From the IMG/VR virus record IMGVR_UViG_3300027996_002186, positions 372,001 through 436,000 of that record: a DNA stretch of 64,000 nucleotides. One strand, 5' to 3'. The notes beneath the pieces are model-generated. The model ran no database searches. It saw nothing but the letters and a program-made list of their open reading frames with translations, and was not told the origin of the DNA. Each line of letters begins with the position of its first letter. Position 1 is the first letter of the stretch. This document shows positions 2,466-36,599 of the stretch, piece after piece. Made by a program: the position numbers and the translations under genes.

Positions 2466-4091
2466 TTATTTAACTACTAAGTGTGGTGCTGACCAAATAG
2501 ATTCTGATTTAGCAAAATCAACTATTTTTGTTATATAATCATCTCTTATTTCTTGTGGTAGATTATATAACCAATCTATGAATACTATTGATTGTAGTCT
2601 TGAATTCTCCGCATTTGACTTTTCTCCATCACCAGATAAATCTTGATTGAATATACCGCTGAGGTAATCATTTTCAACCACAAACATCTCACCAACTAAA
2701 TATTCTCTTATTTCAGATTTATCCTTTTTCTTTCTTATAAACTCCTTGATTTGATACAAATTATCTGGCATTAAATGATTTATCATTGATCCAGCTTTAC
2801 CACTAACATACCCACCCTTACTCTTAAGCTCAAGTGATATGTTTGATGTTTGATTACTATCAAATGTTCTACAATCTATACCTGAACCATCTTTCCAATT
2901 ATTAGCAACATCGGCCTCGTTCTCAAATTTCCAGGAAAAGTCTATATTAGCTGTTTTTCTAGAAGGCTTTACCACTTTATCCAGGTTATCAGCTTTTAAC
3001 TTATTATCTATATCTTTATTACCAGAATTAACTATCATTAATTTTGGAGTATTTATCGTTTGCTTAAGTGATACTCCAACTAATCCTTTTCGATGAATAA
3101 CAGACTCACCTAAGAAATCATTAAGATCATCAATATTATCCATATCATAATATGAATTATAATTAGATAAAGATTCATTTCCCTTAAAAACTATCCAGAA
3201 ATCGCTTGGGTTCCATTTAGCCATATTTGAAAGCTCTGGTATATCATAAAAATTATAATCACCTAATAACTCACCAGCCTCGAGTATTATTCCTTTTTTA
3301 TTTTGTATTTCTTCTTTAAATATAAAATGAGCAAATTTATTAATAAGTAGATCTTTACTATTCTTCACTATATAAGAAATATTACTTATATCATCCTCAC
3401 TAAGGTATCCATCTTTAATTCTATTACCGCTTTTATCATATCCCAGTAGAAAATCACATTGATTTTCCATACCTTCCATGATTTTTTTACCTGTTGTAAA
3501 TATATCATATGAGTTATTAATATCATCCATAGATTTATTATTTGATATACTAGCAAATCTTATATCCTTTCTAGTCTCATACCTCATAAGTATTTTACCA
3601 TGATGTGTTTGTATGTTTAACTTAACACCAGCGTTTAACCAAGCTCTAATAGCTAATGTTATTAGAAAGGCAGTTTCTCTAAAATGGTTACCTCTTTTAG
3701 AAGGACCAACACGATCATATTGTCTAACCATATTGGATATTGATCCTCTCTTGGCTACAGCCCAGTCAATGTTAATATCATCAGAATCGGTATGATATAT
3801 CATTAAATCATCATTTGATTCAACTTCTAATTTTAATTTTAAGTCTGAGAAATTTATTTCAGTAACAGTTGAATTTCTTATCCAAATAACCTTTTCATCA
3901 TCACCTGGGATATCCCCCTTTGATAAATCTAATTTTATATCAAAATTATTAATGTTAGATGTTTCTATCTCATTTACTAATTTTTTCATCGCCACTGATT
4001 TCCCCTTTCTAGAAAGGCTATAAGGCATTTTTTTATCACCACTAAGAGTAGCTTCTTTAATAAACCTATTATACCTTAGTATTTTTTTCAT
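2466..4091 (-). CDS. Large hypothetical protein, possible PD-(D/E)xK-like nuclease, N-terminal capsid-targeting-like motif
   Basis: Start moved to ATG 4091 (MKKILRYNRFIKEA), 5 nt after TAATATATA; KWNPSDFW...LVGVSLK motif. Confidence 0.6.
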   Translation of the reverse strand: MKKILRYNRFIKEATLSGDKKMPYSLSRKGKSVAMKKLVNEIETSNINNFDIKLDLSKGDIPGDDEKVIWIRNSTVTEINFSDLKLKLEVESNDDLMIYHTDSDDINIDWAVAKRGSISNMVRQYDRVGPSKRGNHFRETAFLITLAIRAWLNAGVKLNIQTHHGKILMRYETRKDIRFASISNNKSMDDINNSYDIFTTGKKIMEGMENQCDFLLGYDKSGNRIKDGYLSEDDISNISYIVKNSKDLLINKFAHFIFKEEIQNKKGIILEAGELLGDYNFYDIPELSNMAKWNPSDFWIVFKGNESLSNYNSYYDMDNIDDLNDFLGESVIHRKGLVGVSLKQTINTPKLMIVNSGNKDIDNKLKADNLDKVVKPSRKTANIDFSWKFENEADVANNWKDGSGIDCRTFDSNQTSNISLELKSKGGYVSGKAGSMINHLMPDNLYQIKEFIRKKKDKSEIREYLVGEMFVVENDYLSGIFNQDLSGDGEKSNAENSRLQSIVFIDWLYNLPQEIRDDYITKIVDFAKSESIWSAPHLVVK

Positions 4092-4173
4092 AACATTATA
4101 TATTAATATCATGAAATCAGAATCATGTTATCTCACTCATTATTCAAAATGTATATTTCGAATATGTAATAAT

Positions 4174-10734: not shown

Positions 10735-11178
10735 TTCAAAAGCTATATCAATAGAAGAAATCCAACTAAGTGCTGCTTCTGACATAGATTCAATATATTT
10801 CTTGAAGTTATCAACATTACTTACCCACACAACATTATTTTTCACTAGATAAATATTAGATAACTTACAATTATATCTACTCTCAAAGTGATCAATTGTT
10901 AATTTTAATTCTTCATAAAAATCATTACTAAAATTAAATTCCGAGTTTTTATGTGCTTCTCTAATCATAATTAGATCTATCATCAGACCGCGTTTTATAT
11001 TAGTCATATCTAATTCATTGTGGTCCTCAATAATGTCTTTGCCGCCCATTGATGCTATATTTACAAGATTAACATCGTGAAATCTCATACCAAAATCACA
11101 GACATTACCAAATATATCTTTAATATCATGAAAATTCATATCATCAGTAAAGTCCTCGAATAATTTAATATACTTCAT
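10711..11178 (-). CDS. Hypothetical protein, CTS-like N-terminus, dispersed paralog family
   Basis: MKYIKLFEDF; DIKDIFGNVCDFG; TAATATATA 4 nt upstream. Confidence 0.8.
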   Translation of the reverse strand: MKYIKLFEDFTDDMNFHDIKDIFGNVCDFGMRFHDVNLVNIASMGGKDIIEDHNELDMTNIKRGLMIDLIMIREAHKNSEFNFSNDFYEELKLTIDHFESRYNCKLSNIYLVKNNVVWVSNVDNFKKYIESMSEAALSWISSIDIAFELNDTVDN

Positions 11179-11215
11179 ATTGTATATATTAATATAATTT
11201 CGTATATTTGTTTAA

Positions 11216-11380
11216 ATGGAAAAAATAAGAACTAAAAGAAAAGGACCCACTGATGGTTATACTCCTATTGGAGAAGCATTATGTCAGGGTAAATGTGATA
11301 CAGAAGCTAGAAGAACTAAATCTGGTATTGTAGTAGTTTGTGATGCTTGTAAAAGAGTTGTTATTGATAATAGAGACTAG
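11216..11380 (+). CDS. Small zinc-ribbon-like protein (54 aa), not in ORF track
   Basis: MEKIRTKRKGPTDGYTPIGEALCQGKCDTEARRTKSGIVVVCDACKRVVIDNRD*; 5 nt after TATATTTG; stop abuts next ATG at 11381. Confidence 0.75.
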   Translation: MEKIRTKRKGPTDGYTPIGEALCQGKCDTEARRTKSGIVVVCDACKRVVIDNRD

Positions 11381-15943: not shown

Positions 15944-16531
15944 ATGTTTATAATTGACACAAATAGAGAAGATGTACTAAAAGATTTCCCATTCGTACAA
16001 GAATGGATAGACACTGCTCAGAAAGTTTTTATTAAAAAAGAAATCGATGAATCAAAAATAGAGTTTTATTACTCCTATGGGTTTTTTGTACCTAAGGTTG
16101 ATGATAAACAAGAACTATATGAAGATATGTATGAAAAGAGTTCTAAGATGTTATTTGAAGACAGATTAACTTTTGAGTTATCTAAGGTACGAGTTAATAT
16201 AACTATGAAGATCGGTAAATTTATACTATCTAATAGATTAGAGAAAGGAAGTATACCAGAAATAATTAATAGTATTGTTAAGGAAATAACTAAAGTTAAA
16301 ATGACAATAGAGTCAGAATATCATGACAACCAAGATGTGGTTGATTCTATTCCAGAAATTGATCCAGAGATAATAAAATTCGAATCGGTTAAAGAAATTG
16401 TGAGTAGTGATTACTCCGAGACTCCTGATTTTGATATTGATTTAATACTTGATAAAATCAATAAAAAGGGATTGGATGCATTATCTGATGAAGAAAAAGA
16501 ATACTTAGATAAGAAAAGCAAAGACCTTTAA
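15944..16531 (+). CDS. Hypothetical protein with C-terminal DUF6576-like module
   Basis: C-terminus FDIDLILDKINKKGLDALSDEEKEYL. Confidence 0.7.
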   Translation: MFIIDTNREDVLKDFPFVQEWIDTAQKVFIKKEIDESKIEFYYSYGFFVPKVDDKQELYEDMYEKSSKMLFEDRLTFELSKVRVNITMKIGKFILSNRLEKGSIPEIINSIVKEITKVKMTIESEYHDNQDVVDSIPEIDPEIIKFESVKEIVSSDYSETPDFDIDLILDKINKKGLDALSDEEKEYLDKKSKDL

Positions 16532-17343
16532 TGGATAGTAATAAAATATACAAAGGTGATTCTTTACAATTATTAAAGAGTATGTCTGATAATTCGGTAG
16601 ATCTAATTATCACATCGCCACCTTATGCTGATTTAAAAACTTATATTGATTTTAAGGGAATACTTGCTGATGATTATGTAGAGTGGTTTTTACCTTATTG
16701 TAGTGAAATATGTAGAGTTATGAAACCCACTGGTTCTTTTATTTTAAATATAAACGATAAAGTAGAAAAAAGATTTAGACACCCTTATGTTTTTGATTTA
16801 ATATCAGAGTTACATAAGAGAACAGACTTAAAATTATTCGAGAGGTTGTTTTGGAATAAAATGAAAGGTCTTCCTAATAGATATAGGTTTGGTGATAGAG
16901 TTGAATATTTATTCTGGTTTGCTAAAGATAAAAGTTTCTATTTCAATATAGATGAAATGAGAACAGAATATTCTGAAACTTCTATCAAAAGGATGAAGAA
17001 ACCACTAAAGAAGAGATATGCTAGGGATGGAGATTGTGATGAATATAAATCTTGGGCACCAAATCCAAAAGGAGCATTACCAACAACACTTATAAATATA
17101 TCATCAGAGTCTAAAAAGATTGCTGATAGTCACGTTGCGGTTTATCCCATCGAGTTGGTCAAGTATTTTATAAATGGATCAACCAAAGAAGGTGATGTTG
17201 TTTTGGATCCATTTATGGGAACTGGTACAACAGCTATAGCCGCAAAAGAATTGAATAGGAATTATATTGGATTTGAATTACAACCTAATTATATAACTAT
17301 TGCTGAAAAAAGAATAAAAGATTATGATAAGAATATCAAATAA
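16531..17343 (+). CDS. Orphan beta-class DNA methyltransferase (probably m4C)
   Basis: Catalytic TSPPY precedes SAM-binding LDPFMGTGTT. Confidence 0.92.
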   Translation: MDSNKIYKGDSLQLLKSMSDNSVDLIITSPPYADLKTYIDFKGILADDYVEWFLPYCSEICRVMKPTGSFILNINDKVEKRFRHPYVFDLISELHKRTDLKLFERLFWNKMKGLPNRYRFGDRVEYLFWFAKDKSFYFNIDEMRTEYSETSIKRMKKPLKKRYARDGDCDEYKSWAPNPKGALPTTLINISSESKKIADSHVAVYPIELVKYFINGSTKEGDVVLDPFMGTGTTAIAAKELNRNYIGFELQPNYITIAEKRIKDYDKNIK

Positions 17344-20819: not shown

Positions 20820-22304
20820 ATGATTATAAAAAACATACACGAAAAACTTTTAAATGGTATCCAAACAATGTTAATTGATACTAAAGTAAATTTACCATAC
20901 TACGGTGAGTTTAACTTACATATCAATTTTGTTGAACAAGATTCTATCGGTACTTGCGCCGTAAACGTATCTTCAAAAGGTATGAACTTCTTTTATTCTC
21001 CTAAATTCTTAGAGGATATGTCACAAAAAGAAGTAAACTTCATTACTATACATGAGGATTTCCACTTATTATTCAATCACCCACAACGTACTGTTAGTGG
21101 TCAATACGACCACAAGATGTCTAACATCGCACAAGATATGATTATTAATCACGTTATTTGGGAAGATATTCCACACTCATTTGTTGAGATTCCTAAGTCG
21201 AAAGATGGTAAGAATATGGCACTTTTTGTACCTAAAGATTACCCTGGTAAACTTATCTTTGAAGAGTTATACGAATGGTTGAAAGACGAGAAAGAGAAAT
21301 GGGATAAAGAAAAGAAAGAACAAGACAAGTGTAAATCTTGTGATGGATCTGGAAAGAAAGAAGATAAAGACGAAAAAGGAGAAAAGTCTAAAGAAAAAGG
21401 CGAAGGTCAGAAGCCTGGTGAAGGTGACGGAGAAGGTGAGTCTAAAGAAAAGGGTCAAGACGAAGGTCAAGGTGACGGAGAAGGAGAATCTTGTCCTGAT
21501 TGTGATGGAACTGGAAACAAGGGTGGTAAAGATTCTGGTGGTAAAGACGCTTACGGACCTTATGGACAAAACCCATCAAAAGATTCTGAGTCATTAGATA
21601 CTTGGTCTAAAGAACAAATTTTCCAAGATATGGAAGATGGGAATGGTGAGTATATGGATAAACACATTGCTGATGATGTCCCGGAAGAAATGAGAGAAGG
21701 AATGGTTAAAGACGTTATGGAAAGACTTGCGGCTCGTGGGTTATCAGCGGGTAACGTTGAACAAACACTTAACAAACTTCGTAAGAGAAGAAAAGATTAC
21801 TTAAAAGATATAAAGAGAGCAGTTTCTAATGTGATTTTCGGTACTAAGAAACAAAAGACGATTGTTAAACCAAACAGACGACAGATTAAGGGTCTTAAAG
21901 GAAATCGTAAAGTTAAGACTAAGATAAACTGTATCCTTGATACCTCTGGTTCAATGGGTGGTACGTTTGAGAAAGTTCTTTCTTATGTATATAGAAATGA
22001 TATTGAAATCAACTTAATTGAGGCTGATACCGAAGTTAAGTGGGTTGAAACCATAAAGAAGAAAAGAGGGTTAGAAACACTTAAAATTAAAGGACTTGGT
22101 GGAACAATACTACAACCAGCAATTGATATGGTGGCGGCAGACTTCAACGACTTCAACACTGTTGTATTAACAGATGGTTATTGTGATTCACTTGACCTAA
22201 CAAGAATTAAAGGTAAAGTACTACTGATTTCAATTGGAGTTAAAGTACCTATCACGAGATCTAATGGAAAAGTAAAACAAATACTTGTCGAAAGAAACGA
22301 CTAA
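20820..22304 (+). CDS. DUF2201-type HExxH metallopeptidase-like + VWA domain protein
   Basis: IHEDFH, NIAQDMIIN, two CxxCxGxG motifs flanking a G/E/K linker, MIDAS DTSGSM, GGT, LTDGY. Confidence 0.88.
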   Translation: MIIKNIHEKLLNGIQTMLIDTKVNLPYYGEFNLHINFVEQDSIGTCAVNVSSKGMNFFYSPKFLEDMSQKEVNFITIHEDFHLLFNHPQRTVSGQYDHKMSNIAQDMIINHVIWEDIPHSFVEIPKSKDGKNMALFVPKDYPGKLIFEELYEWLKDEKEKWDKEKKEQDKCKSCDGSGKKEDKDEKGEKSKEKGEGQKPGEGDGEGESKEKGQDEGQGDGEGESCPDCDGTGNKGGKDSGGKDAYGPYGQNPSKDSESLDTWSKEQIFQDMEDGNGEYMDKHIADDVPEEMREGMVKDVMERLAARGLSAGNVEQTLNKLRKRRKDYLKDIKRAVSNVIFGTKKQKTIVKPNRRQIKGLKGNRKVKTKINCILDTSGSMGGTFEKVLSYVYRNDIEINLIEADTEVKWVETIKKKRGLETLKIKGLGGTILQPAIDMVAADFNDFNTVVLTDGYCDSLDLTRIKGKVLLISIGVKVPITRSNGKVKQILVERND

Positions 22305-23235: not shown

Positions 23236-24063
23236 ATGGAATGGATTAAAAGATTTGAAGAATTAAACTCAAATACATATAGATCAGCTGGAGATCATCT
23301 TATAAATATCAATAAGATATCAAGAGGTCAAAAACTAATTGATTATGCTGATGAAAAAGATTTCGGATTCTATAATGTTTGGTGGGGAAACACAAATAGT
23401 GCCATTAGTAAAAAACCTTTAGTGTTTACTAATCCAAAGTCTGATTTTATTTACAACGTTTTTAAGATAACTCGAGGAGGACCGAAAGCTAATGACATTA
23501 AACATAAACTTTCCAATAAGGGTCCAGAAGAATTAGTTAAAGATTGGTATGATGGAGTTTCTTCTTTATCATTCACCATAAATTTCACATTCAAAACCGC
23601 AGGTGAATCTTTAAAAGTACATGATAGATTAAAAAGATGGAAAGTTCCATTATTTTCTATAAACTTTCAAATAGCTGAGTGGGTAGAAAAAGAAGATTTT
23701 GAAGGTGTAGATGACGATCCGATAGTAAAAAATGCTCTTGATTTATATCAACACATGGATGGTTATCATTATCCACAGATTTCTATACAAAGACCTTTAG
23801 ATGATCACTACTTTGGTATATTTAGTGATAGAAAATCAGCCAATAAATTTAAAAGAGATGTACTTGGTCCTGCTATAGAAGAACATCATGATAAAATATT
23901 TGAGATATTCTCTATCATAGGAGCTTCTGCAAAAGATTTTGAAAAAGCAATTAAAGCATTTAAAAATATCAGAACCAACTATCTATATGATGAATCAATA
24001 GGAAGATCAAACCCAGAGCAATTATGGTATAATAATTATGGTTGGGATAATGAGATGCATTGA
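23236..24063 (+). CDS. Tandem paralog 1 of 4, CTS-like N-terminus
   Basis: MEWIKRFEELNSNTYRSAG; FSDRKSANKF; IRTNYLY. Confidence 0.8.
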   Translation: MEWIKRFEELNSNTYRSAGDHLININKISRGQKLIDYADEKDFGFYNVWWGNTNSAISKKPLVFTNPKSDFIYNVFKITRGGPKANDIKHKLSNKGPEELVKDWYDGVSSLSFTINFTFKTAGESLKVHDRLKRWKVPLFSINFQIAEWVEKEDFEGVDDDPIVKNALDLYQHMDGYHYPQISIQRPLDDHYFGIFSDRKSANKFKRDVLGPAIEEHHDKIFEIFSIIGASAKDFEKAIKAFKNIRTNYLYDESIGRSNPEQLWYNNYGWDNEMH

Positions 24064-24090
24064 TATGGTAATAAATAAAGATATAAAGAT

Positions 24091-24834
24091 ATGAAATACT
24101 TAAAACGATTTAACGAAGAGTTAAAACCTCAAACATATAGAAGAGCGGCTCATAAACTTGATAAAATGGGTCATACTGGTAGAGCTAAGGAATTAAAGGA
24201 TTGGTCTTATAAAATAGAAGATGATGTCAATATCACTAAATGGAAAAATAACTTAGAAGAATATAGTAAATTTGGAACATATAAATTGAATATTAAAACA
24301 GAGAAAGGTGACATAAGTGGTGATTTTTTCTTAGATATTATTTTTGATGGTGATAGTTTTGTGGATTCATTATATGACAATGAAGAAACCTCTAATAAAT
24401 CTGGTGGTATATGGTTCTTTGTTGGTATTATTCCAACAACAGAAGAACTTTTAAAAGAATGTAAAGATAAATTTCCGGATAATGATATGGGTAATGGTTT
24501 TTTCTGGGGATTGTCTGTTGGTTTAGATTATGAAATAGAAGATGATAAAGTTAATTTCAAGAAATTTGAAATTCATAATTATGACAAACACATATCAGGT
24601 GATATTTCTTTAGGTGATAGAGGAACCGCAAATAGATTTAGAAATATCTTAAAGAAGATGTTTACTGATCCATCATTCAATTATCCAAGTGGTAGAAATG
24701 ATGTTGAATATGTGTATCAAGCATTTGAACAAGTTATTTTAAGCGAAGCTGGATTCTCATCAGATTATGGATTTAAATTAGAAGATGTTGCTGAGTTTAT
24801 AAATACTATATCAATAAATACACTATATAAATAA
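24091..24834 (+). CDS. Tandem paralog 2 of 4
   Basis: MKYLKRFNEELKPQTYRRAAHKLDKMGH; DRGTANRF; ISINTLY. Confidence 0.8.
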   Translation: MKYLKRFNEELKPQTYRRAAHKLDKMGHTGRAKELKDWSYKIEDDVNITKWKNNLEEYSKFGTYKLNIKTEKGDISGDFFLDIIFDGDSFVDSLYDNEETSNKSGGIWFFVGIIPTTEELLKECKDKFPDNDMGNGFFWGLSVGLDYEIEDDKVNFKKFEIHNYDKHISGDISLGDRGTANRFRNILKKMFTDPSFNYPSGRNDVEYVYQAFEQVILSEAGFSSDYGFKLEDVAEFINTISINTLYK

Positions 24835-25736
24835 TGAAATACTTAAAACGATTTAACGAAGAATTAAACTCTTATACTTATACTAAAGCGGCGAATGCTC
24901 TTAAAAAAATGGGTCATAATAGAAGATCTAGTGTTTTAACAAAATGGGGAGAAGAAACCAAGAAAAGAGAAAAAATAAAAGCTGCGAATGAATTAAGAGC
25001 TAAGCTTGAAAAGACACCACCATTTAGTATGAAAATTTTCAGAGATAAGTGGAATAGTGCCACGAAAAGTAGAGATTTCTCACAAGGTCCTTATCTTGAA
25101 GGTAATTTTTACTTAGGAGCTTATTTTGAAGAAGACTGGGCTTATGATGGTGAATATTTTATGGAATATGAACAGGATAATAAATCAACGATGCAATTTT
25201 CATTTGGTTTATCACTTTTTCCAGCTGATGAAGAAACACAATTAAAGTTTGATAAAGAAGAATGGGAAAATGAATGGAATAATCAAATCTGGCCAGTTAT
25301 TTTCACAATTAGATTAAATAATGATAAAACTACTTTAGATCAAGAAAAATCAGCATTCTTTTGGGAAGAAAGAGAGGATGGTAATTTTTTATTTTCAAGT
25401 AGGTCTGAAGCTATGAAATTCAAAAGATACTTAATATACTCATTGAGTGGTGTTGATAATGATTTTAGTAAAGCATTTAGTGGTGTTAAATCAATAATTA
25501 GTGATATGATTAAACGTTATAATGATAAAGATGGTTATTACTTGACTAGGGTTCCAAAAAACGTTGTTGGGAACGGTATTGTTTTCGATAGAGATGATTA
25601 TGAAATAATAAAAAAAGGTAATTTTGAATATTATTGGCCATTTGGTGATAAAGAATGTAATCTAAAGGAAAGTGATTATAATTATTTTGAGAAAGCGATT
25701 AAACGTATGGGTCTAAATAATTTATATAGAGATTAA
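24834..25736 (+). CDS. Tandem paralog 3 of 4
   Basis: MKYLKRFNEELNSYTYTKAANALKKMGH; FSSRSEAMKF; MGLNNLYRD. Confidence 0.8.
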   Translation: MKYLKRFNEELNSYTYTKAANALKKMGHNRRSSVLTKWGEETKKREKIKAANELRAKLEKTPPFSMKIFRDKWNSATKSRDFSQGPYLEGNFYLGAYFEEDWAYDGEYFMEYEQDNKSTMQFSFGLSLFPADEETQLKFDKEEWENEWNNQIWPVIFTIRLNNDKTTLDQEKSAFFWEEREDGNFLFSSRSEAMKFKRYLIYSLSGVDNDFSKAFSGVKSIISDMIKRYNDKDGYYLTRVPKNVVGNGIVFDRDDYEIIKKGNFEYYWPFGDKECNLKESDYNYFEKAIKRMGLNNLYRD

Positions 25737-26524
25737 TGAGATATTTAAGAAAATATAATGAAGAGTTAGATGGTAAGACTTACTTAGATGCCGCTCGTAA
25801 GCTAGGTAAACTAGGTCATAAAAATAGAGTATCTAAATTAAAAGACTGGGCCAAAAAAAGTGCATACAATTCTCTTAGGAAAGGAATTGAAAGTTTAGGA
25901 ACCTTTGAGTTAACTATTGATAGCAATTATGGCTCAACATATACTGGTGAGTTTTATATAGATTTACAATTCGATGAGGATCAATTCAATGATAGATATT
26001 ACAACTGGATTTGTGGTGATGTTATTGATCTTTGGCTTTATTTTAATATTAGTATTTTACCAGTAGATGATTCTTTCAAAAAACATGATTCTGCTAGTTC
26101 TGGAGAGATTAATGAAAAACTTAATGGATCCTATGGAATAGGTGAGATATCAATACATTTGGGTAATATTCCTGAGGATTTGGATGTGCATGATATGGAA
26201 AAAGTTTATCAAATATACCAAAAGGATAAGTACTCATCTAAAATACCACATGTGGTTAACCCCTTAGGTAAGGTTTCTATGGATTATTTTGATGTTCCTT
26301 TCTACTTTACTGATAGAAAATCAGCATCTAGGTTTAGAAAGGGTTTAATAGATATATTTAAGGGTAATATCGTTTATAAAGAAACTAGTAAACAACCTGG
26401 CGGATTAAAGGAAGAAATTATTGACTTTCTAATATCAGATAATAACTATCTTGATTTTGATGAATTCCAAATTTGGCTAGAAAGGTTAGGAAGAATAAAT
26501 ATTAATAGATTATATAAAGATTAA
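25736..26524 (+). CDS. Tandem paralog 4 of 4
   Basis: MRYLRKYNEELDGKTYLDAARKLGKLGH; FTDRKSASRF; ININRLYKD. Confidence 0.8.
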   Translation: MRYLRKYNEELDGKTYLDAARKLGKLGHKNRVSKLKDWAKKSAYNSLRKGIESLGTFELTIDSNYGSTYTGEFYIDLQFDEDQFNDRYYNWICGDVIDLWLYFNISILPVDDSFKKHDSASSGEINEKLNGSYGIGEISIHLGNIPEDLDVHDMEKVYQIYQKDKYSSKIPHVVNPLGKVSMDYFDVPFYFTDRKSASRFRKGLIDIFKGNIVYKETSKQPGGLKEEIIDFLISDNNYLDFDEFQIWLERLGRININRLYKD

Positions 26525-26539
26525 AACTTATATTTACAA

Positions 26540-27742
26540 ATGATAATCAAAAAATACAAAAAATTTTTAGAATCAACTAAAACAGAACAAGATATGTGGA
26601 ACATAATTCCAGATTCAGTTAAAGATTTGCATAAACTTTTCCAATCAAGTGGTAAGAAATTATACCTTGTTGGAGGATCAGTTCGTGATTTTTTAACAAA
26701 TGACACCCCAAAAGATTTTGATTTAGCAACTGATGCACTTCCGGATGAAGTGTTAGAGATTGTTAAAGGTAAATACAGAACTAACTTACAAGGTAAGGCA
26801 TTTGGTGTTGTAGTTGTTTATACAGATGAAATTCCAGAAGGAATGGAAGTGGCTACATTCAGAGAAGATATAAGTAAAGGTAGAAATCCTGAGGTTAAAC
26901 TTGGTGTTACTATTGAAGATGATGTTAAGCGTAGAGATATAACTTACAACGCTCTTTTCTATGACTTAGATAAGAAAGAAATTATAGATTTAACTGGCGG
27001 TAAGGCAGATTTAGAATCTGGTATCACTAGAATGGTTGGTGAGCCAATAGAGAGGTTTGATGAAGATTCGCTTCGTATTCTTCGAGCATTTAGATTTGCA
27101 TCTAGATATGAACATCCATTACACAAAGATACAGAACGTGCAATAGAGAAGAGAAAACAACTTGAGAACATCGATCCTGAGACAGGAGACATGAAAAGAA
27201 TATCACAAGAAAGAGTTTGGGAAGAAATGACTAAAGCTTGGAAGCAAGCTAAAGATTACAGATACTACTTAAACTTCTTTACTAAGTTTGATATGTGGGA
27301 TCAAGTATTTCCTGGAGCTAACATCAACACAGAGTTGGTTGATAGTAAAAACTTTGCTGTTGTTATATCTAACCTATTTAAGAACGAATCTACTAGTGGT
27401 TTGGCTACTAAATTGATACAAGAGTATAAAATGGATTCTTGTTCAGATGTTACTGGTGTAGATAACTTAGTATCTAAGATAATATTCTTAATTGACTTCT
27501 TAAAATTCGATACTGATAAGGTATTTGAAACTTTCAAAAAGAAACAACAATGCGCTATTGATGATACAACCATTTTAGAGTGGTTAGATGTTAATAACAT
27601 AACAGATGATTATTTTATCAAGTTTGTTGAATACAAACCATCTGTCTCTGCAAAAGATTTGATGTTACAAGGGTTCAAGGGATCTAACTTGGGTAAGGAA
27701 ATCAAGAGATTGGAGATTGAAAAATTCAAGAATATTCTATAA
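26540..27742 (+). CDS. cca: Class II tRNA nucleotidyltransferase (CCA-adding enzyme family)
   Basis: LVGGSVRD, DFDLAT, EVATFR, RRDITYNA, EDSLRILRAFRF, ERVWEE. Confidence 0.93.
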   Translation: MIIKKYKKFLESTKTEQDMWNIIPDSVKDLHKLFQSSGKKLYLVGGSVRDFLTNDTPKDFDLATDALPDEVLEIVKGKYRTNLQGKAFGVVVVYTDEIPEGMEVATFREDISKGRNPEVKLGVTIEDDVKRRDITYNALFYDLDKKEIIDLTGGKADLESGITRMVGEPIERFDEDSLRILRAFRFASRYEHPLHKDTERAIEKRKQLENIDPETGDMKRISQERVWEEMTKAWKQAKDYRYYLNFFTKFDMWDQVFPGANINTELVDSKNFAVVISNLFKNESTSGLATKLIQEYKMDSCSDVTGVDNLVSKIIFLIDFLKFDTDKVFETFKKKQQCAIDDTTILEWLDVNNITDDYFIKFVEYKPSVSAKDLMLQGFKGSNLGKEIKRLEIEKFKNIL

Positions 27743-27788
27743 TTTCAAATTAATATTTTTTTAATAATTTTTTACAATATATACTCAT

Positions 27789-28526
27789 ATGATAAACTTC
27801 GTTACATATGTAAAAGATGTCGTTGGTAATAACTACCTGGCTATCAAATTCGATAAAGGAACAATAGAAACATACTTAAACCAATTAAAAGAAATTATTG
27901 GTTCTGATTTCGAAAACTTTACAGAGAACCAACAAAAAAGAGATGGTGGATCACATCACATGACCGTTATTAACGTAATGGATTATAATAAACTTTCTAA
28001 AGAAGTTGGTATGGATAAGTTTGTATCATCACTTGACTCAGTTTTCAACTATGAGATAGATGATTTGAAATTCATGGGTATTGGTACCGCTGAACGAAAT
28101 ACAAACAGAGCTTATTTTATTGTTTGTAAAAGTGATAAATTAGATGCTATTAGAACTAGATATGGGTTAAAAGATCACGACTTTCATATAACTTTAGGAT
28201 TTAAACACAAAGATGTTTTTGGTGTTAGAAAAAATGAGATAGTAAAAAAAGAGGGTAAGTTTCTGAAACTTTTGAAGCAGGAATTTTATAAGAGTGATAA
28301 TTGGAATTTTATAAGAAAGATTGAAAACTACCAACTCGACCCAAAATCAGAGATTATTCCTGTGTCTATAAGTGATTCACACTTGAAAGTAAAATGTTCT
28401 GGGTATTATATAGATATAACTTATATGGATGATGGTGAGAAATTTTGGATAGTTACAAAATATCCAATCGAAGAGGAATTACCTCGTATGTCAGAGACAG
28501 AAATTGCTAAAAAATTGAATAAATAA
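27789..28526 (+). CDS. 2H phosphoesterase (two HxT motifs)
   Basis: HHMTVI and DFHITLGF. Confidence 0.8.
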   Translation: MINFVTYVKDVVGNNYLAIKFDKGTIETYLNQLKEIIGSDFENFTENQQKRDGGSHHMTVINVMDYNKLSKEVGMDKFVSSLDSVFNYEIDDLKFMGIGTAERNTNRAYFIVCKSDKLDAIRTRYGLKDHDFHITLGFKHKDVFGVRKNEIVKKEGKFLKLLKQEFYKSDNWNFIRKIENYQLDPKSEIIPVSISDSHLKVKCSGYYIDITYMDDGEKFWIVTKYPIEEELPRMSETEIAKKLNK

Positions 28527-28527
28527 T

Positions 28528-28776
28528 ATGGAGTTACTTTACAGCTTAGATGAGTGCATAGATAGAGAAAGAGTAGTAGGTAGGTTAGAACTACTTAAAT
28601 TAGCAGGAAAATTATATTATGATATAGAATATGATATACTAGAAATAGAAGATTTAGATTTATCTGATGATGAGTTAGATAAGTTATTAAAGCTTCTAGA
28701 TAAAAACGATGTTATTGAATACACTGAAAGAGAGAATGATATTGATAAAGATGATTTTCTTAATGAAGATTATTAA
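28528..28776 (+). CDS. Small acidic hypothetical protein
   Basis: 82-aa ORF, D/E-rich. Confidence 0.65.
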   Translation: MELLYSLDECIDRERVVGRLELLKLAGKLYYDIEYDILEIEDLDLSDDELDKLLKLLDKNDVIEYTERENDIDKDDFLNEDY

Positions 28777-29276: not shown

Positions 29277-30248
29277 ATGAAAAATCTATTAATAACCATA
29301 TTACTATCAATAACAAATACTATACCAGCTATGTGCACACTGGTTGTAGATAATGGTAATTGGAGTAGTGCTTCATCTTGGGATTGTGGGTATATACCTG
29401 CATCGGATGGGGATACTATGGTTATCCCTTCTTCTATGACTGTTGTAGTTGATTTAAACAGCCCTACCTATGTTGATATGAGGATTGAAGTTTATGGAAC
29501 AATGCAGTTCAGTAATGGAAAGAAAATCAACATGGATAGTGATGGTATTGTTGAAATTTATACTGGAGGAACATTAACCGGTGGTAATTCTGGTTCTAGA
29601 TTAACGATAGGTGGAACTACTTGGTGGAGTGGAACAGATCCTCCCTTAATAGGCCCAACCATTGTTAGTAATAGCGGGTTTTTACCAATTGAATTAGTAG
29701 AATTTAATGCTATTGTAAATGAAGATAGAGTAGAAATATCATGGACAACTGCATCCGAAATAAACAATGACTATTTTATTGTTGAGAAAAGTAAAGATAC
29801 ATTTATATGGAGTAAGGTAATTGAAGCCAAGGGAGCAGGTAATAGTAATATCATAATCAATTATTTTGAAATTGATAACAACCCACTAATGGGGCTATTT
29901 TACTATCGCCTCACTCAAGTCGATTTTGATGGTAAGCAAGAGACATTTAATATTATTCCTGTTGAAAACGCTATAAAAGGTGAGGGTATTATGAACATCT
30001 ACCCCAACCCAGTAAATAAAGGAGAATGTATTAGTCTTTCATTTGAAAGTTTACATCGAGATAAGCAGGGAATTCTAGTTGTTCTTAGAGACATAAGAGG
30101 TAATGAAGCATATTCTATAATAAAATTTGTTGATTGTAAAGATGGGTTGGTTGTTATTGATATTCCTCATCACCTTACATCAGGCACATATTTAGTAGTT
30201 GCTACTTCTGAAAATTTATTATACAGTAAAAAAATAATCATAAAATAA
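29277..30248 (+). CDS. Secreted protein with type IX secretion (type A) C-terminal sorting domain
   Basis: Signal peptide; GNWSSASSW G8-like beta region; LPIELVEFNA..WTTASEINNDYF..YYRLTQVDFDG; CTD IYPNPV..GTYLVV..KKIIIK. Confidence 0.88.
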   Translation: MKNLLITILLSITNTIPAMCTLVVDNGNWSSASSWDCGYIPASDGDTMVIPSSMTVVVDLNSPTYVDMRIEVYGTMQFSNGKKINMDSDGIVEIYTGGTLTGGNSGSRLTIGGTTWWSGTDPPLIGPTIVSNSGFLPIELVEFNAIVNEDRVEISWTTASEINNDYFIVEKSKDTFIWSKVIEAKGAGNSNIIINYFEIDNNPLMGLFYYRLTQVDFDGKQETFNIIPVENAIKGEGIMNIYPNPVNKGECISLSFESLHRDKQGILVVLRDIRGNEAYSIIKFVDCKDGLVVIDIPHHLTSGTYLVVATSENLLYSKKIIIK

Positions 30249-30628
30249 TGATAATCAAGGGCGATCAAAGTACTCCATACGTAAAGTTAGATAAAGAAAA
30301 CTGTACACTTACTATTATAGGTAAATCTTACCCAGAACACCCATCATTATTTTATGATCCGATAGTGGAAGAGATTGATAAATGTAAAAGTGATTTGGGA
30401 AAATCTAAAATCACAATCAGAATAGCATTAGAAATATTAAATTCAGTTTCAACTAAATACCTTTTCCATTTGGTAAAAGAGTTATATGAATCAGCTATGG
30501 AGACGGAGGTTAATTGGTATTATGAAGAAGATGATGAAAGTATGTTAGAAGAAGGTAATTATTTAAAATCATCCCTCCCTAAATCAAATTTTAATTTAAT
30601 AGGTGTGTTGGATCTTAGATCAATCTAA
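30248..30628 (+). CDS. SiaC family (DUF1987) regulatory phosphoprotein
   Basis: STPYV, GKSYPE..FYDPI, NSVSTK, VNWYYEEDDESMLEEG. Confidence 0.85.
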   Translation: MIIKGDQSTPYVKLDKENCTLTIIGKSYPEHPSLFYDPIVEEIDKCKSDLGKSKITIRIALEILNSVSTKYLFHLVKELYESAMETEVNWYYEEDDESMLEEGNYLKSSLPKSNFNLIGVLDLRSI

Positions 30629-30710: not shown

Positions 30711-31085
30711 TTATCTCTTCTTGTCTAACAGAAGTCGAACAGATCGAAGAATATCTGTGTGATCAAATGGTTTAAATATGTAATCAGCGGCTCCTAAATT
30801 CATTCCTTTTTGAAGGTCCAAAGTATCTACTTTTGCTGTTACAAATAGGAAAGGAGGAATTACTTCCGTTGTCCAAATCAATTGTAACTCCCAGAGTAAT
30901 TCAAACCCGTCTAATTCAGGCATAGCAACGTCACAAATAACCAAGTCTGGACAATCTTTCATAATTGCATCATAACCTAATCTACCATTAGTAGCAGTTG
31001 AAACTTTGTATCCTGATAATTCAAATATTTCTTGTAATGTTTCTCGGATGTTTATATCATCTTCAACAATTAGTATGTGATCCAT
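30711..31085 (-). CDS. Single-domain response regulator receiver
   Basis: ILIVEDD, ICDVAMPELDG, VTAK, YIFKPF. Confidence 0.93.
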   Translation of the reverse strand: MDHILIVEDDINIRETLQEIFELSGYKVSTATNGRLGYDAIMKDCPDLVICDVAMPELDGFELLWELQLIWTTEVIPPFLFVTAKVDTLDLQKGMNLGAADYIFKPFDHTDILRSVRLLLDKKR

Positions 31086-35723: not shown

Positions 35724-36599
35724 ATGGCATTAAGTTATATTGGCGGAAAGAGTCGCATTGGTACATGGATAAGGAATTACATTCCAAATGACGTAGAGAC
35801 TTACGTAGAACCCTTTTCGGGTATGTTTTGGGTATTCTTTAAGTTAGATGTTCCACAATTCAAAAATTTAAAGAGAGTTGTTTATAATGACTTTAATCCA
35901 TTAAATGTTAACCTATTTAATTGTATTGTAAACTATGATGATTTTTATGATGTGATTAAAGATTATAAATCACAGGATAAGGAATTATTCAATAGATGTC
36001 AGAGTGAAATATTTCATCCCGATTTCCAAGTTGATTTATCTGAACCTGATTATCATACAGCTGCAAAATATGCGTATGTTCTTAGTCAAGTTTGGTCTGG
36101 TACTAATCCAGAGAAAGGTAAGTTTATTGACTTAAAGGGTAAATATAAATCTAAGTTTGATTCATTCAAAGGTAAGTTAACCAATGATAAGTGGAAAGGT
36201 TATTTTGATAAGATTACTGTTTGTGAGAATATGGACTTCCAAGATGTTATTGAGAAGTATGATTCACCATCAACATATTTTTATTGTGACCCACCTTACT
36301 ATAAAACAGAAAAGTATTATGCTAATCATGATTTCGGTTTAGATACACATGAAAGATTAGCTGATTCATTAAAAGCAACAACTGGTAAATTCTCATTGAG
36401 TTACTACCACTTTGATCAATTAGAAGAATGGTTCGTGAGAGGTGATTATAGATGGGAGCAGAAAGACTTTCATAAAGCTTCTATGGCAAAGTCTGGTAAG
36501 GCACAAACAAAGGGAACAGAAATTCTGATAATGAATTATGGTATACCTAAAGATGATTTGGAATCCTCAGAAGAGGAAGAAGAAACATTTGAGATATAA
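35724..36599 (+). CDS. dam: Dam-like (D12 class) DNA adenine methyltransferase
   Basis: YIGGKS, YVEPFSG, YNDFN, YCDPPY, EILIMNY. Confidence 0.9.
   Translation: MALSYIGGKSRIGTWIRNYIPNDVETYVEPFSGMFWVFFKLDVPQFKNLKRVVYNDFNPLNVNLFNCIVNYDDFYDVIKDYKSQDKELFNRCQSEIFHPDFQVDLSEPDYHTAAKYAYVLSQVWSGTNPEKGKFIDLKGKYKSKFDSFKGKLTNDKWKGYFDKITVCENMDFQDVIEKYDSPSTYFYCDPPYYKTEKYYANHDFGLDTHERLADSLKATTGKFSLSYYHFDQLEEWFVRGDYRWEQKDFHKASMAKSGKAQTKGTEILIMNYGIPKDDLESSEEEEETFEI

What the first reader, a model, noticed from the sequence alone, without database searches (positions are those of the whole stretch)
26540..28526. tRNA end-maturation/repair module: CCA-adding enzyme + 2H phosphoesterase, complementing the RNase P RNA
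Seen: a class II nucleotidyltransferase with intact DxD, RRD and EDxxR motifs is directly followed by a protein with two HxT motifs. Established: RNase P makes tRNA 5' ends, CCA enzymes build or repair 3' ends, and 2H enzymes open 2',3'-cyclic phosphates left by RNases. Inference: the phage controls both tRNA ends, possibly to repair tRNAs cut by host defence nucleases. The CCA enzyme starts MIIKKYKKFLES, matching the capsid-targeting-like motif, so it may be injected with the DNA. Its flexible loop (FREDISKGRNP) looks slightly shorter than in typical CCA enzymes, so CC-only activity is possible.
Basis: partly seen in the sequence, partly recalled or inferred. Interest (0 to 1): 0.7.

Follow-up and report, generated by a model that had tools for sequence, protein, structure and literature searches.

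The report
Megaphage CCA enzyme beside 2H phosphoesterase
A very large uncultured phage of Bacteroidota carries a tRNA CCA-adding enzyme next to a 2H phosphoesterase, as part of a scattered RNA-end repair kit of a kind already described in jumbo phages; no RNase P RNA was found.

Summary
The two genes are real and sit at the stated coordinates. ORF 26540-27742 is a class II nucleotidyltransferase with intact DxD, RRD and EDxxR motifs. Its closest sequence and fold matches are full CCA-adding enzymes. ORF 27789-28526 is a 2H phosphoesterase of Pfam family 2H-SAK, with both HxT motifs conserved and an uncharacterised C-terminal domain.

The window lies in a 312.7-kb fragment of a Mahaphage-type megaphage of at least 483-551 kb. 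The gene order NTase then 2H-SAK holds in every close relative examined, but not in one more distant phage relative or in bacteria.

The same record also encodes an Rnl1 RNA ligase, a PNKP-type 3'-phosphatase, an AAA_33 kinase and a second 2H domain fused to a DEDD exonuclease. It has four tRNA genes, none with an encoded CCA. A tRNA/RNA end-repair role is therefore plausible. It is a known jumbo-phage theme (Iyer 2021; Al-Shayeb 2020).

- No RNase P RNA was detected by any Rfam model.
- CC-only activity is not indicated.
- The substrate of the 2H enzyme is unproven; cyclic-nucleotide immune signals are a live rival.

The most interesting result is the N-terminal leader MIIKKYKKFLES. It occurs on about 60 proteins and resembles the T4 capsid-targeting sequence.

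The parts
23236..26524 (+). Array of four paralogous genes (275, 247, 300 and 262 aa), each starting with the leader (MEWIKRFEEL, MKYLKRFNEEL, MKYLKRFNEEL, MRYLRKYNEEL). They lie directly upstream of the NTase on the same strand, with gaps of 0-28 nt.
   Evidence: No Pfam match. The first gene has the promoter-like motif 5 nt upstream.
26540..27742 (+). Class II tRNA nucleotidyltransferase of CCA-adding type, 400 aa, with head, neck, body and tail domains and no HD domain.
   Evidence: Pfam PolyA_pol 1.7e-30. PHROG 2244 at 1e-56. Best PDB sequence hit is the CCA-adding enzyme 6ibp at 2.5e-30. AF2 model pLDDT 87.7. Foldseek top hits are CCA-adding enzymes at TM 0.62-0.73 over about 390 columns.
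26540..26575 (+). N-terminal leader MIIKKYKKFLES (aa 1-12), resembling the T4 capsid-targeting sequence.
   Evidence: F9, E11 and S12 are invariant in orthologues down to 49% identity. All 120 close orthologues keep it. An orthologue at 40% identity lacks it and starts at aa 22. It models as a detached low-confidence helix. T4 IPII and IPIII start MKTYQEFIAE.
26714..26722 (+). Motif A catalytic carboxylates D59-F-D61.
   Evidence: invariant.
26864..26929 (+). Flexible loop, 22 aa between TFR108 and RRD131.
   Evidence: pLDDT 54 for aa 111-120.
26930..26938 (+). Motif B, R131-R132-D133.
   Evidence: invariant.
27062..27076 (+). Motif D, E175-D176-S-L-R179 (nucleotide-templating residues).
   Evidence: E175, D176 and R179 invariant.
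27776..27784 (+). Promoter-like AATATATAC, 4 nt before the 2H-SAK start codon, inside the 46-nt spacer.
   Evidence: The same motif lies 4-6 or 18-26 nt upstream of 94 of 410 genes, including a tail-fibre gene.
27789..28247 (+). 2H phosphoesterase domain (aa 1-153) of the 2H-SAK protein. HxT motifs at 27957-27965 (H57-M-T59) and 28185-28193 (H133-I-T135).
28248..28526 (+). C-terminal alpha/beta domain (aa 154-245) of unknown function. It is kept in the megaphage clade and absent from most 2H-SAK proteins.
28528..28776 (+). Acidic 82-aa protein whose gene starts 1 nt after the 2H-SAK stop. It lies directly downstream of 2H-SAK in nearly all related loci, including those without a nearby NTase.
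   Evidence: No Pfam match.

Best explanation
The locus encodes two RNA-end enzymes of a megaphage that probably infects Bacteroidota.

The first is a class II tRNA nucleotidyltransferase of the full CCA-adding type. It would complete the 3' ends of the phage's own tRNAs, which encode only N73-C74. It would also rebuild tRNA 3' ends that have been trimmed or cut.

The second is a 2H-SAK phosphoesterase. It most likely opens the 2',3'-cyclic phosphates left on RNA by metal-independent RNases. The phage's stand-alone PNKP-type HAD phosphatase could then remove the remaining phosphate. The resulting 3'-OH end could be extended by the CCA enzyme or sealed by the phage's Rnl1 ligase, after 5' phosphorylation by its AAA_33 kinase.

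In effect this is the E. coli Cca protein (nucleotidyltransferase plus HD cyclic phosphodiesterase) split into two genes, set within a T4-like Pnkp/Rnl1 repair kit.

Shown: the domain identities, motif integrity, folds, gene inventory, tRNA 3' ends and synteny.
Inferred: the substrates, the order of steps, and any link to host defence nucleases.
For: NTase identity rests. Full CCA-adding enzymes rank above poly(A) polymerase (TM 0.54-0.61), A-adding enzymes (0.50-0.60) and CC-adding enzymes (0.45-0.49).

The four tRNA genes lack CCA.

The rest of the repair inventory is in the same record:
- Rnl1, PF09511 at 2.7e-21, plus a T4_Rnl1_C match below Pfam's cut-off (21.7 vs 27 bits)
- HAD_PNKP at 3.4e-29
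- AAA_33 kinase at 3.3e-19
- a 2H domain fused to an RNase_T-type exonuclease

NTase lies upstream of 2H-SAK in L001, L002 and L004-L009, at 46-100% NTase identity, and in L040 at 40%. Relative L002 also has two HAD_SAK_2 genes within 4 kb. GenBank megaphages LR745206 and LR756502 carry NTase, 2H-SAK and Rnl1.

Some 2H-SAK proteins are fused to an AAA_33 kinase, like the kinase-CPD pair of tRNA ligases. In Bdellovibrionales, 2H-SAK is followed by a U5 RNA methyltransferase.

Precedents: the E. coli Cca HD domain removes 2',3'-cyclic phosphate from tRNA (PMC6961547, citing Yakunin 2004). Jumbo-phage RNA repair with CCA enzymes and 2H phosphoesterases is described in PMC7824862.
Against: - Other 2H-SAK domains are fused to Cap15 cyclic-dinucleotide receptors.
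- The 2H gene has its own promoter-like motif.
- A 38%-identity relative (L038) has no NTase within 6 kb, and six bacterial loci have none. The adjacency may be inherited synteny only.
- The repair genes are scattered over more than 200 kb, not in one operon.
- The NTase falls below every NCBIfam equivalog cut-off. It scores about equally for PcnB (156 bits) and CCA (149 bits).
- The HAD_SAK_2 found in relatives is absent here.
Confidence: 0.5

Rival explanations
1. The 2H-SAK protein is a counter-defence enzyme. It destroys nucleotide immune signals such as CBASS cyclic oligonucleotides, type III CRISPR cyclic oligoadenylates or 2'-5' linked signals, as phage Acb1 and the viral ns2, VP3 and poxvirus 2H phosphodiesterases do. 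Its position beside the CCA enzyme is incidental.
Against: It is not an Acb1-family member. PF23474 gives no hit, and BLASTP and hhalign against T4 Acb1 are insignificant. Other 2H-SAK contexts are RNA-related: an AAA_33 kinase fusion, HAD_SAK_2 neighbours and a U5 RNA methyltransferase. In Cap15 fusions the 2H domain could be an RNA-cleaving effector rather than a signal degrader.
Confidence: 0.2
2. The two genes are functionally independent neighbours. The NTase only matures the phage's CCA-less tRNAs or boosts host CCA turnover. The 2H protein serves another pathway, for example hydrolysis of ADP-ribose 1'',2''-cyclic phosphate, Usb1-like 3' trimming, or 2'-5' ligation, possibly together with its tightly linked acidic 82-aa partner.
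Against: The order NTase then 2H survives down to 40% NTase identity while intervening genes come and go. The genome holds all other parts of an end-healing and sealing pathway.
Confidence: 0.2
3. The nucleotidyltransferase is not a CCA-adding enzyme. It is a poly(A) polymerase, or a CC-only or A-only enzyme.
For: The NCBIfam PcnB subfamily model scores slightly higher (156 bits) than the best CCA model (149), both far below their cut-offs. E. coli poly(A) polymerase is the third PDB sequence hit at 2.2e-25. The loop is 3 residues shorter than in 6ibp.
Against: The best sequence and structure matches are full CCA-adding enzymes. CC-adding enzymes (3wfo-3wfs) rank last, at 1.2e-5 by sequence and TM 0.45-0.49. 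The loop is present and modelled as flexible, and it is longer in orthologues. The region GKAFGVVVV does not fit the poly(A) polymerase signature as I recall it from Martin and Keller 2004; I did not check this against a source. The phage tRNAs need CCA.
Confidence: 0.08
4. One reading: a phage RNase P RNA, the CCA enzyme and 2H together control both tRNA ends, and the CCA enzyme is injected with the DNA.
For: The leader resembles the T4 capsid-targeting sequence and is conserved. The repair genes are present.
Against: No RNase P RNA was found in the window, the record or related records. No T4 gp21-type protease was detected, though that search is inconclusive. The leader is on about 60 genes, so it is not specific to tRNA enzymes.
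Confidence: 0.05

Closest known systems
E. coli multifunctional CCA-adding/repair enzyme (Cca: class II NTase plus C-terminal HD domain)
   Same: A class II NTase with the same catalytic motifs, paired with an activity expected to open tRNA 2',3'-cyclic phosphates so that CCA can be rebuilt (PMC6961547; NCBIfam NF008137 match).
   Different: The phage NTase has no HD domain. The candidate cyclic phosphodiesterase is a separate gene of an unrelated fold (2H, metal-independent). Phosphate removal would need a third protein, HAD_PNKP. The coupling is inferred, not shown.
T4 Pnkp + Rnl1 tRNA anticodon-loop repair (counter to PrrC)
   Same: The record has an Rnl1-family ligase with a sub-threshold T4_Rnl1_C match, a PNKP-type HAD 3'-phosphatase and a P-loop kinase. 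The ligase is 31% identical to T4-type Rnl1.
   Different: Kinase and phosphatase are separate small genes, not one Pnkp. There are added 2H enzymes and a CCA enzyme. The genes are dispersed over more than 200 kb. No host anticodon nuclease is known.
Jumbo and huge phage RNA-repair inventories (Iyer et al. 2021, PMC7824862; Al-Shayeb et al. 2020, PMC7162821)
   Same: CCA-adding enzymes, 2H phosphoesterases, ATP-grasp RNA ligases, kinases and HAD phosphatases are described as a recurrent jumbo-phage toolkit. CCA-adding enzymes are listed for huge phages. 509 GenBank phage records hold a homologue of this NTase.
   Different: The 2H-SAK form with the extra C-terminal domain occurs in only 3 GenBank phage records, all megaphages over 634 kb. 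I found no mention of the conserved NTase then 2H-SAK then acidic-protein order, or of the leader peptide, in the papers I searched.
Phage Acb1 (anti-CBASS 2H phosphodiesterase, PF23474)
   Different: No sequence or profile similarity and a different Pfam family. It has an extra C-terminal domain.
[quoted passage not shown]
   Same: A 10-12-residue N-terminal leader of pattern K-x-Y-x-E-F-I-x-E, ending in Glu, on otherwise unrelated proteins.
   Different: About 60 carriers instead of a handful. The NTase has F-L-E-S rather than I-x-E. No gp21-type protease or gp23-type capsid protein was detected in this partial record. Packaging is untested.

Membership tests
Class II tRNA nucleotidyltransferase (CCA-adding enzyme) | Pol-beta head domain with motif A (GGxVRD ... 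DxD) | tested here: met
   PF01743 at 1.7e-30. GGSVRD and D59/D61 are invariant.
Class II tRNA nucleotidyltransferase (CCA-adding enzyme) | Motif B (RRD) and motif D (EDxxR), the protein template for CTP and ATP | tested here: met
   R131-R132-D133 and E175-D176-x-x-R179 are invariant in 20 orthologues.
Class II tRNA nucleotidyltransferase (CCA-adding enzyme) | Head-neck-body-tail architecture like solved CCA-adding enzymes | tested here: met
   Foldseek: 6qy6, 6q52, 8cbm, 1miv and 3h39 at TM 0.63-0.73 over 385-430 columns, E down to 9e-18.
Class II tRNA nucleotidyltransferase (CCA-adding enzyme) | Flexible loop between motifs A and B, whose deletion marks CC-only enzymes | tested here: inconclusive
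   A loop of 22 aa is present and modelled as disordered. It is 3 aa shorter than in 6ibp and 26-29 aa in orthologues. No length threshold could be verified here.
Class II tRNA nucleotidyltransferase (CCA-adding enzyme) | Score above a curated equivalog cut-off (NCBIfam CCA models) | tested here: not met
   Best CCA model NF009814 scores 149 bits against a cut-off of 290. The PcnB subfamily scores 156 against 306. It is a divergent phage lineage.
Class II tRNA nucleotidyltransferase (CCA-adding enzyme) | Adds exactly C-C-A to tRNA 3' ends | not testable with these tools
   Needs an enzyme assay.
2H phosphoesterase superfamily / Pfam 2H-SAK (PF22547) | Family HMM above the gathering score | tested here: met
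   78.9 bits against 27, aa 39-144.
2H phosphoesterase superfamily / Pfam 2H-SAK (PF22547) | Two H-x-T/S motifs | tested here: met
   H57/T59 and H133/T135 are at least 90% conserved in 62 sequences.
2H phosphoesterase superfamily / Pfam 2H-SAK (PF22547) | 2H fold | tested here: met
2H phosphoesterase superfamily / Pfam 2H-SAK (PF22547) | Hydrolysis of RNA 2',3'-cyclic phosphate ends | not testable with these tools
   Needs an enzyme assay.
'Swiss Army Knife' RNA-repair system (Burroughs and Aravind 2016, as reflected in Pfam names) | HAD_SAK phosphatase partner | tested here: not met
   No PF18143 hit in the own record (though the control was silent) and no phmmer hit with the HAD_SAK_2 proteins of L002. 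Present in relative L002. A HAD_PNKP phosphatase is present instead.
'Swiss Army Knife' RNA-repair system (Burroughs and Aravind 2016, as reflected in Pfam names) | RNA ligase and kinase in the same system | tested here: inconclusive
   Rnl1 and an AAA_33 kinase exist, but 39 kb and about 88 kb away, not in an operon. The original paper could not be read.
Acb1 anti-CBASS family (PF23474) | Family HMM or sequence similarity to T4 Acb1 | tested here: not met
   No PF23474 hit. BLASTP E 0.32. hhalign probability about 1%.
Bacterial or archaeal RNase P RNA | Match to an Rfam RNase P covariance model, or conserved P4/CR-V sequence | tested here: not met
T4-type capsid-targeting sequence | Short N-terminal leader resembling MKTYQEFIAE, shared by unrelated proteins | tested here: met
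   About 60 carriers against about 1 expected. Selected at the protein level.
T4-type capsid-targeting sequence | Cognate prohead protease (gp21/S77) and cleavage after (L/I)-x-E | tested here: inconclusive
   No PF03420 hit (control silent). No phmmer hit with T4 gp21. The record is a fragment. Many leaders end I/L-x-E-S, but the NTase has F-L-E-S.
T4-type capsid-targeting sequence | Presence of the carrier proteins in virions | not testable with these tools
   Needs virion proteomics.

The most novel reading that the evidence does not exclude
The conserved N-terminal leader (consensus M-K-Y-L-K-K-Y/F-N-E-F-x-E-S) is a capsid-targeting and propeptide signal like that of the T4 internal proteins. 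About 60 proteins of this megaphage would then be loaded into the giant capsid and injected with the DNA. They include the CCA-adding enzyme, the Rnl1 RNA ligase and the 2H-exonuclease fusion. The phage would arrive with a ready-made tRNA repair kit that acts before any phage gene is expressed.
Probability: 0.2. Interest if true: 0.8.

Novelty: new member of a known kind. Interest (0 to 1): 0.42.

Why it matters
If the reading is right, megaphages of Bacteroidota carry a complete tRNA end-healing, rebuilding and sealing pathway. That would point to tRNA-cleaving host defences as a major selective force on these uncultured viruses. It would also give the uncharacterised 2H-SAK family a first testable substrate.

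The idea itself is not new for jumbo phages. What is new is the specific clade, the split 'Cca-like' arrangement, and above all the leader peptide shared by about 15% of the proteome. If that leader is a packaging signal, it would define the injected proteome of a megaphage from sequence alone.

Tried and rejected
- **RNase P RNA.** Rfam at gathering score and at E<=1 on the window, three RNase P models on the whole record, RF00010 on four related records, and conserved-string searches all gave nothing.
- **Other repair genes.** Rnl2 (PF09414), RtcB (PF01139) and HAD_SAK_2 (PF18143) were not found in the record.
- **Acb1 membership of 2H-SAK.** Rejected.
- **Relation between 2H-SAK and the second 2H domain (L020).** hhalign was insignificant, although both HxT motifs aligned.
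- **NTase/2H-SAK complex prediction.** No verdict, score 0.00. This is not evidence either way.
- **T4 head proteins.** T4 gp17, gp18, gp19, gp20, gp21, gp22 and gp23 were run by phmmer against all ORFs. There were no meaningful hits. The PF03420 search had a silent control.
- **Sigma-70 promoter and terminator scan.** Uninformative in this AT-rich DNA.
- **Group I intron in the split NTase of L008.** No Rfam hit.
- **Atlas search of the C-terminal domain.** Scores below 0.8, no lead.
- **Distant viral 2H-SAK loci (L010-L015).** Uninformative neighbours.
- **Bacterial 2H-SAK loci.** No NTase nearby.
- **Burroughs and Aravind 2016.** Could not be retrieved.
- **The fourth tRNA-like hit in G001 (L054).** Could not be confirmed.
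- **Gene counts.** Genome-wide counts rest on my own simple ORF caller, not on a trained gene finder.
Full report
**What is in the sequence.** The stated coordinates match two adjacent ORFs on the + strand exactly.

ORF 26540-27742 (400 aa) matches the Pfam PolyA_pol head domain at 1.7e-30. It matches PHROG 2244 'tRNA nucleotidyltransferase' at 1e-56. Its best solved relatives are CCA-adding enzymes, led by 6ibp at 2.5e-30. All are invariant in an alignment of 20 orthologues reaching down to 49% identity.

ORF 27789-28526 (245 aa) matches Pfam PF22547, 'Swiss Army Knife, 2H phosphoesterase domain', at 5e-22. H57-x-T59 and H133-x-T135 are at least 90% conserved among 62 relatives.

**Where it lies.** The window is bases 56099-120098 (minus strand) of a 312,709-bp IMG/VR virus record with about 29% G+C.

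The same NTase sequence also sits on contigs of 483 kb and 551 kb. The closest GenBank records are the uncultured phages LR745206 (634,780 bp; NTase 83.5%, 2H 74.7%, Rnl1 83.9% identical) and LR756502 (642,428 bp). These are the genomes over 630 kb of Al-Shayeb et al. 2020. That paper places them in the Mahaphage clade and predicts Bacteroidetes hosts (PMC7162821; PMC9723777). A T9SS sorting-domain protein in the window fits that host.

The record is therefore a fragment of a megaphage, despite CheckV's estimate of 91% completeness.

**What kind of nucleotidyltransferase.** The model (pLDDT 87.7) aligns over its whole length with solved CCA-adding enzymes.

| Enzyme class | Foldseek TM-score |
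|---|---|
| Full CCA-adding enzymes | 0.62-0.73 |
| E. coli poly(A) polymerase | 0.54-0.61 |
| A-adding enzymes | 0.50-0.60 |
| A. aeolicus CC-adding enzyme | 0.45-0.49 |

By sequence the CC-adding enzyme matches at only 1.2e-5.

The flexible loop between TFR108 and RRD131 has 22 residues. That is 3 fewer than in 6ibp. It is invariant in 120 close orthologues, longer (26-29) in more distant ones, and modelled as disordered. This does not look like the loop deletion that marks CC-only enzymes, though only an assay can settle it.

NCBIfam cannot separate PcnB (156 bits) from CCA (149 bits), and both are far below their cut-offs. A poly(A) polymerase therefore remains a minor possibility.

No HD domain is present.

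- *tRNAs.* There are none in the window and four in the record: Glu, Gln, an initiator-like Met, and Cys. All four encode the discriminator base and C74 and then A or T, so none has CCA. They need a CCA-adding activity.
- *RNA ligases.* An Rnl1-type ligase lies 39 kb away. It matches PF09511 at 2.7e-21, with a weaker match to the T4 Rnl1 C-terminal domain that falls below Pfam's cut-off. Rnl2 and RtcB are absent.
- *Further repair parts.* There is a stand-alone PNKP-type HAD 3'-phosphatase at 3.4e-29. There is a 161-aa AAA_33 kinase at 3.3e-19. A second 2H domain is fused to a DEDD (RNase T-like) exonuclease.
- *RNase P RNA.* None was found. The window has no Rfam hit at gathering score or at E<=1. 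The record has none for bacterial A, bacterial B or archaeal RNase P models. Four related records have none. Conserved P4 and CR-V strings occur at chance level. The claim that the module 'complements the RNase P RNA' has no support.

**Are the two genes a unit?** In every relative with a 2H-SAK protein at least 54% identical (L001, L002, L004-L009), the NTase lies upstream on the same strand. It is either directly adjacent or separated by 0.4-2 kb of variable insert. The order persists in L040, where the NTase is 40% identical. It does not persist in L038, where the 2H is 38% identical and there is no NTase within 6 kb. Six bacterial loci also lack it.

The tighter pair is 2H-SAK and the acidic 82-aa protein. 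In the window its gene starts one base after the 2H stop, and it follows 2H-SAK in almost all loci.

The 46-nt spacer before the 2H gene holds AATATATAC four bases before the ATG. The same motif lies 4-6 or 18-26 nt before 94 of 410 genes, among them a tail-fibre gene. The 2H gene probably has its own promoter. The NTase sits directly behind four leader-bearing paralogues, with gaps of 0-28 nt.

A complex prediction gave no verdict. The 'module' is therefore a conserved neighbourhood inside one phage clade, not a demonstrated operon or complex.

**What the 2H enzyme acts on.** Four observations favour RNA ends:
- Some 2H-SAK proteins are fused to AAA_33 kinases, as in tRNA-ligase kinase-CPD modules.
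- HAD_SAK_2 phosphatases flank the pair in L002.
- A U5 RNA methyltransferase follows 2H-SAK in Bdellovibrionales.
- The best fold matches are LigT and CPDase.

Two observations favour nucleotide signals. Other 2H-SAK domains are fused to Cap15 cyclic-dinucleotide receptors. Acb1-type and viral 2',5'-phosphodiesterases match the fold nearly as well. The protein is not an Acb1-family member.

I put RNA 2',3'-cyclic-phosphate healing at about one half and signal degradation at about one fifth.

**Most likely mechanism.** Metal-independent RNases, or spontaneous cleavage, leave 2',3'-cyclic phosphates. The proposed steps are:
1. 2H-SAK opens the cyclic phosphate.
2. HAD_PNKP removes the remaining phosphate.
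3. The CCA enzyme rebuilds the acceptor end, or Rnl1 reseals a nicked loop after 5' phosphorylation by the kinase.

The CCA enzyme also finishes the phage's own tRNAs.

This mirrors E. coli Cca, whose HD domain removes the cyclic phosphate before CCA repair (PMC6961547, citing Yakunin 2004). Here that function would be split into separate genes. It also mirrors T4 Pnkp/Rnl1. The general scheme is already described for jumbo phages (PMC7824862), and CCA-adding enzymes are listed for huge phages (PMC7162821). A homologue of the NTase occurs in 509 GenBank phage records. This is therefore a new member of a known kind.

**The leader peptide.** A position-specific scan finds the leader (consensus M-K-Y/H-L-K-K-Y/F-N-E-F-x-E-S) at the N terminus of about 60 of 410 ORF-called genes. 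About one is expected from its internal frequency. Codons vary synonymously and the upstream DNA is not a shared cassette, so selection acts on the peptide.

In the NTase, F9, E11 and S12 are as invariant as the catalytic residues. An orthologue at 40% identity simply lacks the leader and begins at residue 22. The model shows the leader as a detached, low-confidence helix.

T4 internal proteins IPII and IPIII start MKTYQEFIAE. That is the 10-residue capsid-targeting sequence cut off by the gp21 prohead protease (PMC10229621; PMC3012670). The resemblance (K-x-Y-x-E-F-I-x-E) is striking.

The Rnl1 ligase (MKKLSKYLEFINES) and the 2H-exonuclease fusion (MLKKYKEFIKES) also carry the leader. 2H-SAK, HAD_PNKP and the kinase do not.

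No T4-type protease or capsid protein was detected, but the record is partial and the search was insensitive. With 15% of genes carrying the leader, other roles are possible, such as targeting to another compartment or binding to a chaperone. I rate the packaging reading at about 0.2.

**Verdict.** The finding is a new member of a known class of phage RNA-repair genes, with moderate interest. The leader peptide deserves its own follow-up.

Noticed in passing
Whole record G000. In the window, for example 23236, 24091, 24834, 25736 and 26540 (+), and 2466-4112 (-): About 60 of 410 genes begin with one leader peptide (consensus M-K-Y/H-L-K-K-Y/F-N-E-F-x-E-S), against about 1 expected. It is selected at the protein level and resembles the T4 capsid-targeting sequence MKTYQEFIAE. 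Carriers include the NTase, the Rnl1 ligase and the 2H-exonuclease fusion. The same leader appears in related contigs (L038).
   Followed up: partly
window 27776-27784, and 94 gene starts across G000: A promoter-like motif (T/A)ATATATA lies either 4-6 nt or 18-26 nt before the start codon of 94 of 410 genes (188 copies genome-wide). A tail-fibre gene is among them. The 4-6 nt class would give near-leaderless mRNAs.
   Followed up: partly
G000:C1:146746-148056 (+) = L020: A 436-aa protein joins a LigT-like 2H domain (2_5_RNA_ligase2 at 7.8e-8; Acb1 just below its cut-off) to a DEDD RNase_T-type exonuclease, and it carries the leader. It could trim or heal RNA 3' ends, or degrade nucleotide signals. 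Homologues of the 2H part occur in Maribacter phages.
   Followed up: partly
L008:3956-5976: In one related viral contig the NTase gene is interrupted by about 840 nt exactly at the flexible-loop codons (aa 110-114). No Rfam intron matches. It may be an intron, an intein-less insertion or a mobile element.
   Followed up: partly
G000:C1:4171-4243, 11168-11241, 200972-201044 (-), 278309-278380 (-): All four phage tRNA genes encode N73 plus C74 but not C75-A76. Four C74 by chance is unlikely at 29% G+C. The tRNA-Met has a C1-U72 mismatch and three G-C pairs at the base of the anticodon stem, like an initiator tRNA.
   Followed up: partly
Whole record G000 compared with G001 (IMGVR_UViG_3300027996_002186, 483,262 bp): The record is rated 91% complete by CheckV. 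Yet the identical NTase and neighbourhood occur on contigs of 483 kb and 551 kb, and the nearest GenBank relatives are 635-642 kb. The record is probably about half a genome.
   Followed up: partly
Metagenomic proteins P0216, P0270 and P0252; bacterial loci L056 and L058-L060: 2H-SAK domains occur fused to Cap15 cyclic-dinucleotide receptor domains (with TM helices) and to AAA_33 kinases. In Bdellovibrionales the 2H-SAK gene is followed by an overlapping U5 RNA methyltransferase gene.
   Followed up: partly
window 29277-30248, 30248-30628, 30711-31085 (-): The phage encodes a protein with a G8 domain and a weak, sub-threshold match to the type IX secretion sorting domain, a SiaC-family regulatory phosphoprotein and a CheY-type response regulator. 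These suggest a Bacteroidota host and manipulation of host signalling or the cell surface.
   Followed up: no
window 28528-28776 (+): A very acidic 82-aa protein is almost always encoded right after 2H-SAK, even where the NTase is absent. It could be a partner or regulator of the phosphoesterase.
   Followed up: no
window 16531-17343, 35724-36599, 20820-22304: Two DNA methyltransferases (N6_N4_Mtase and D12 class) and a DUF2201 metallopeptidase/VWA protein lie in the same window. The last is syntenic in L001 and L002.
   Followed up: no
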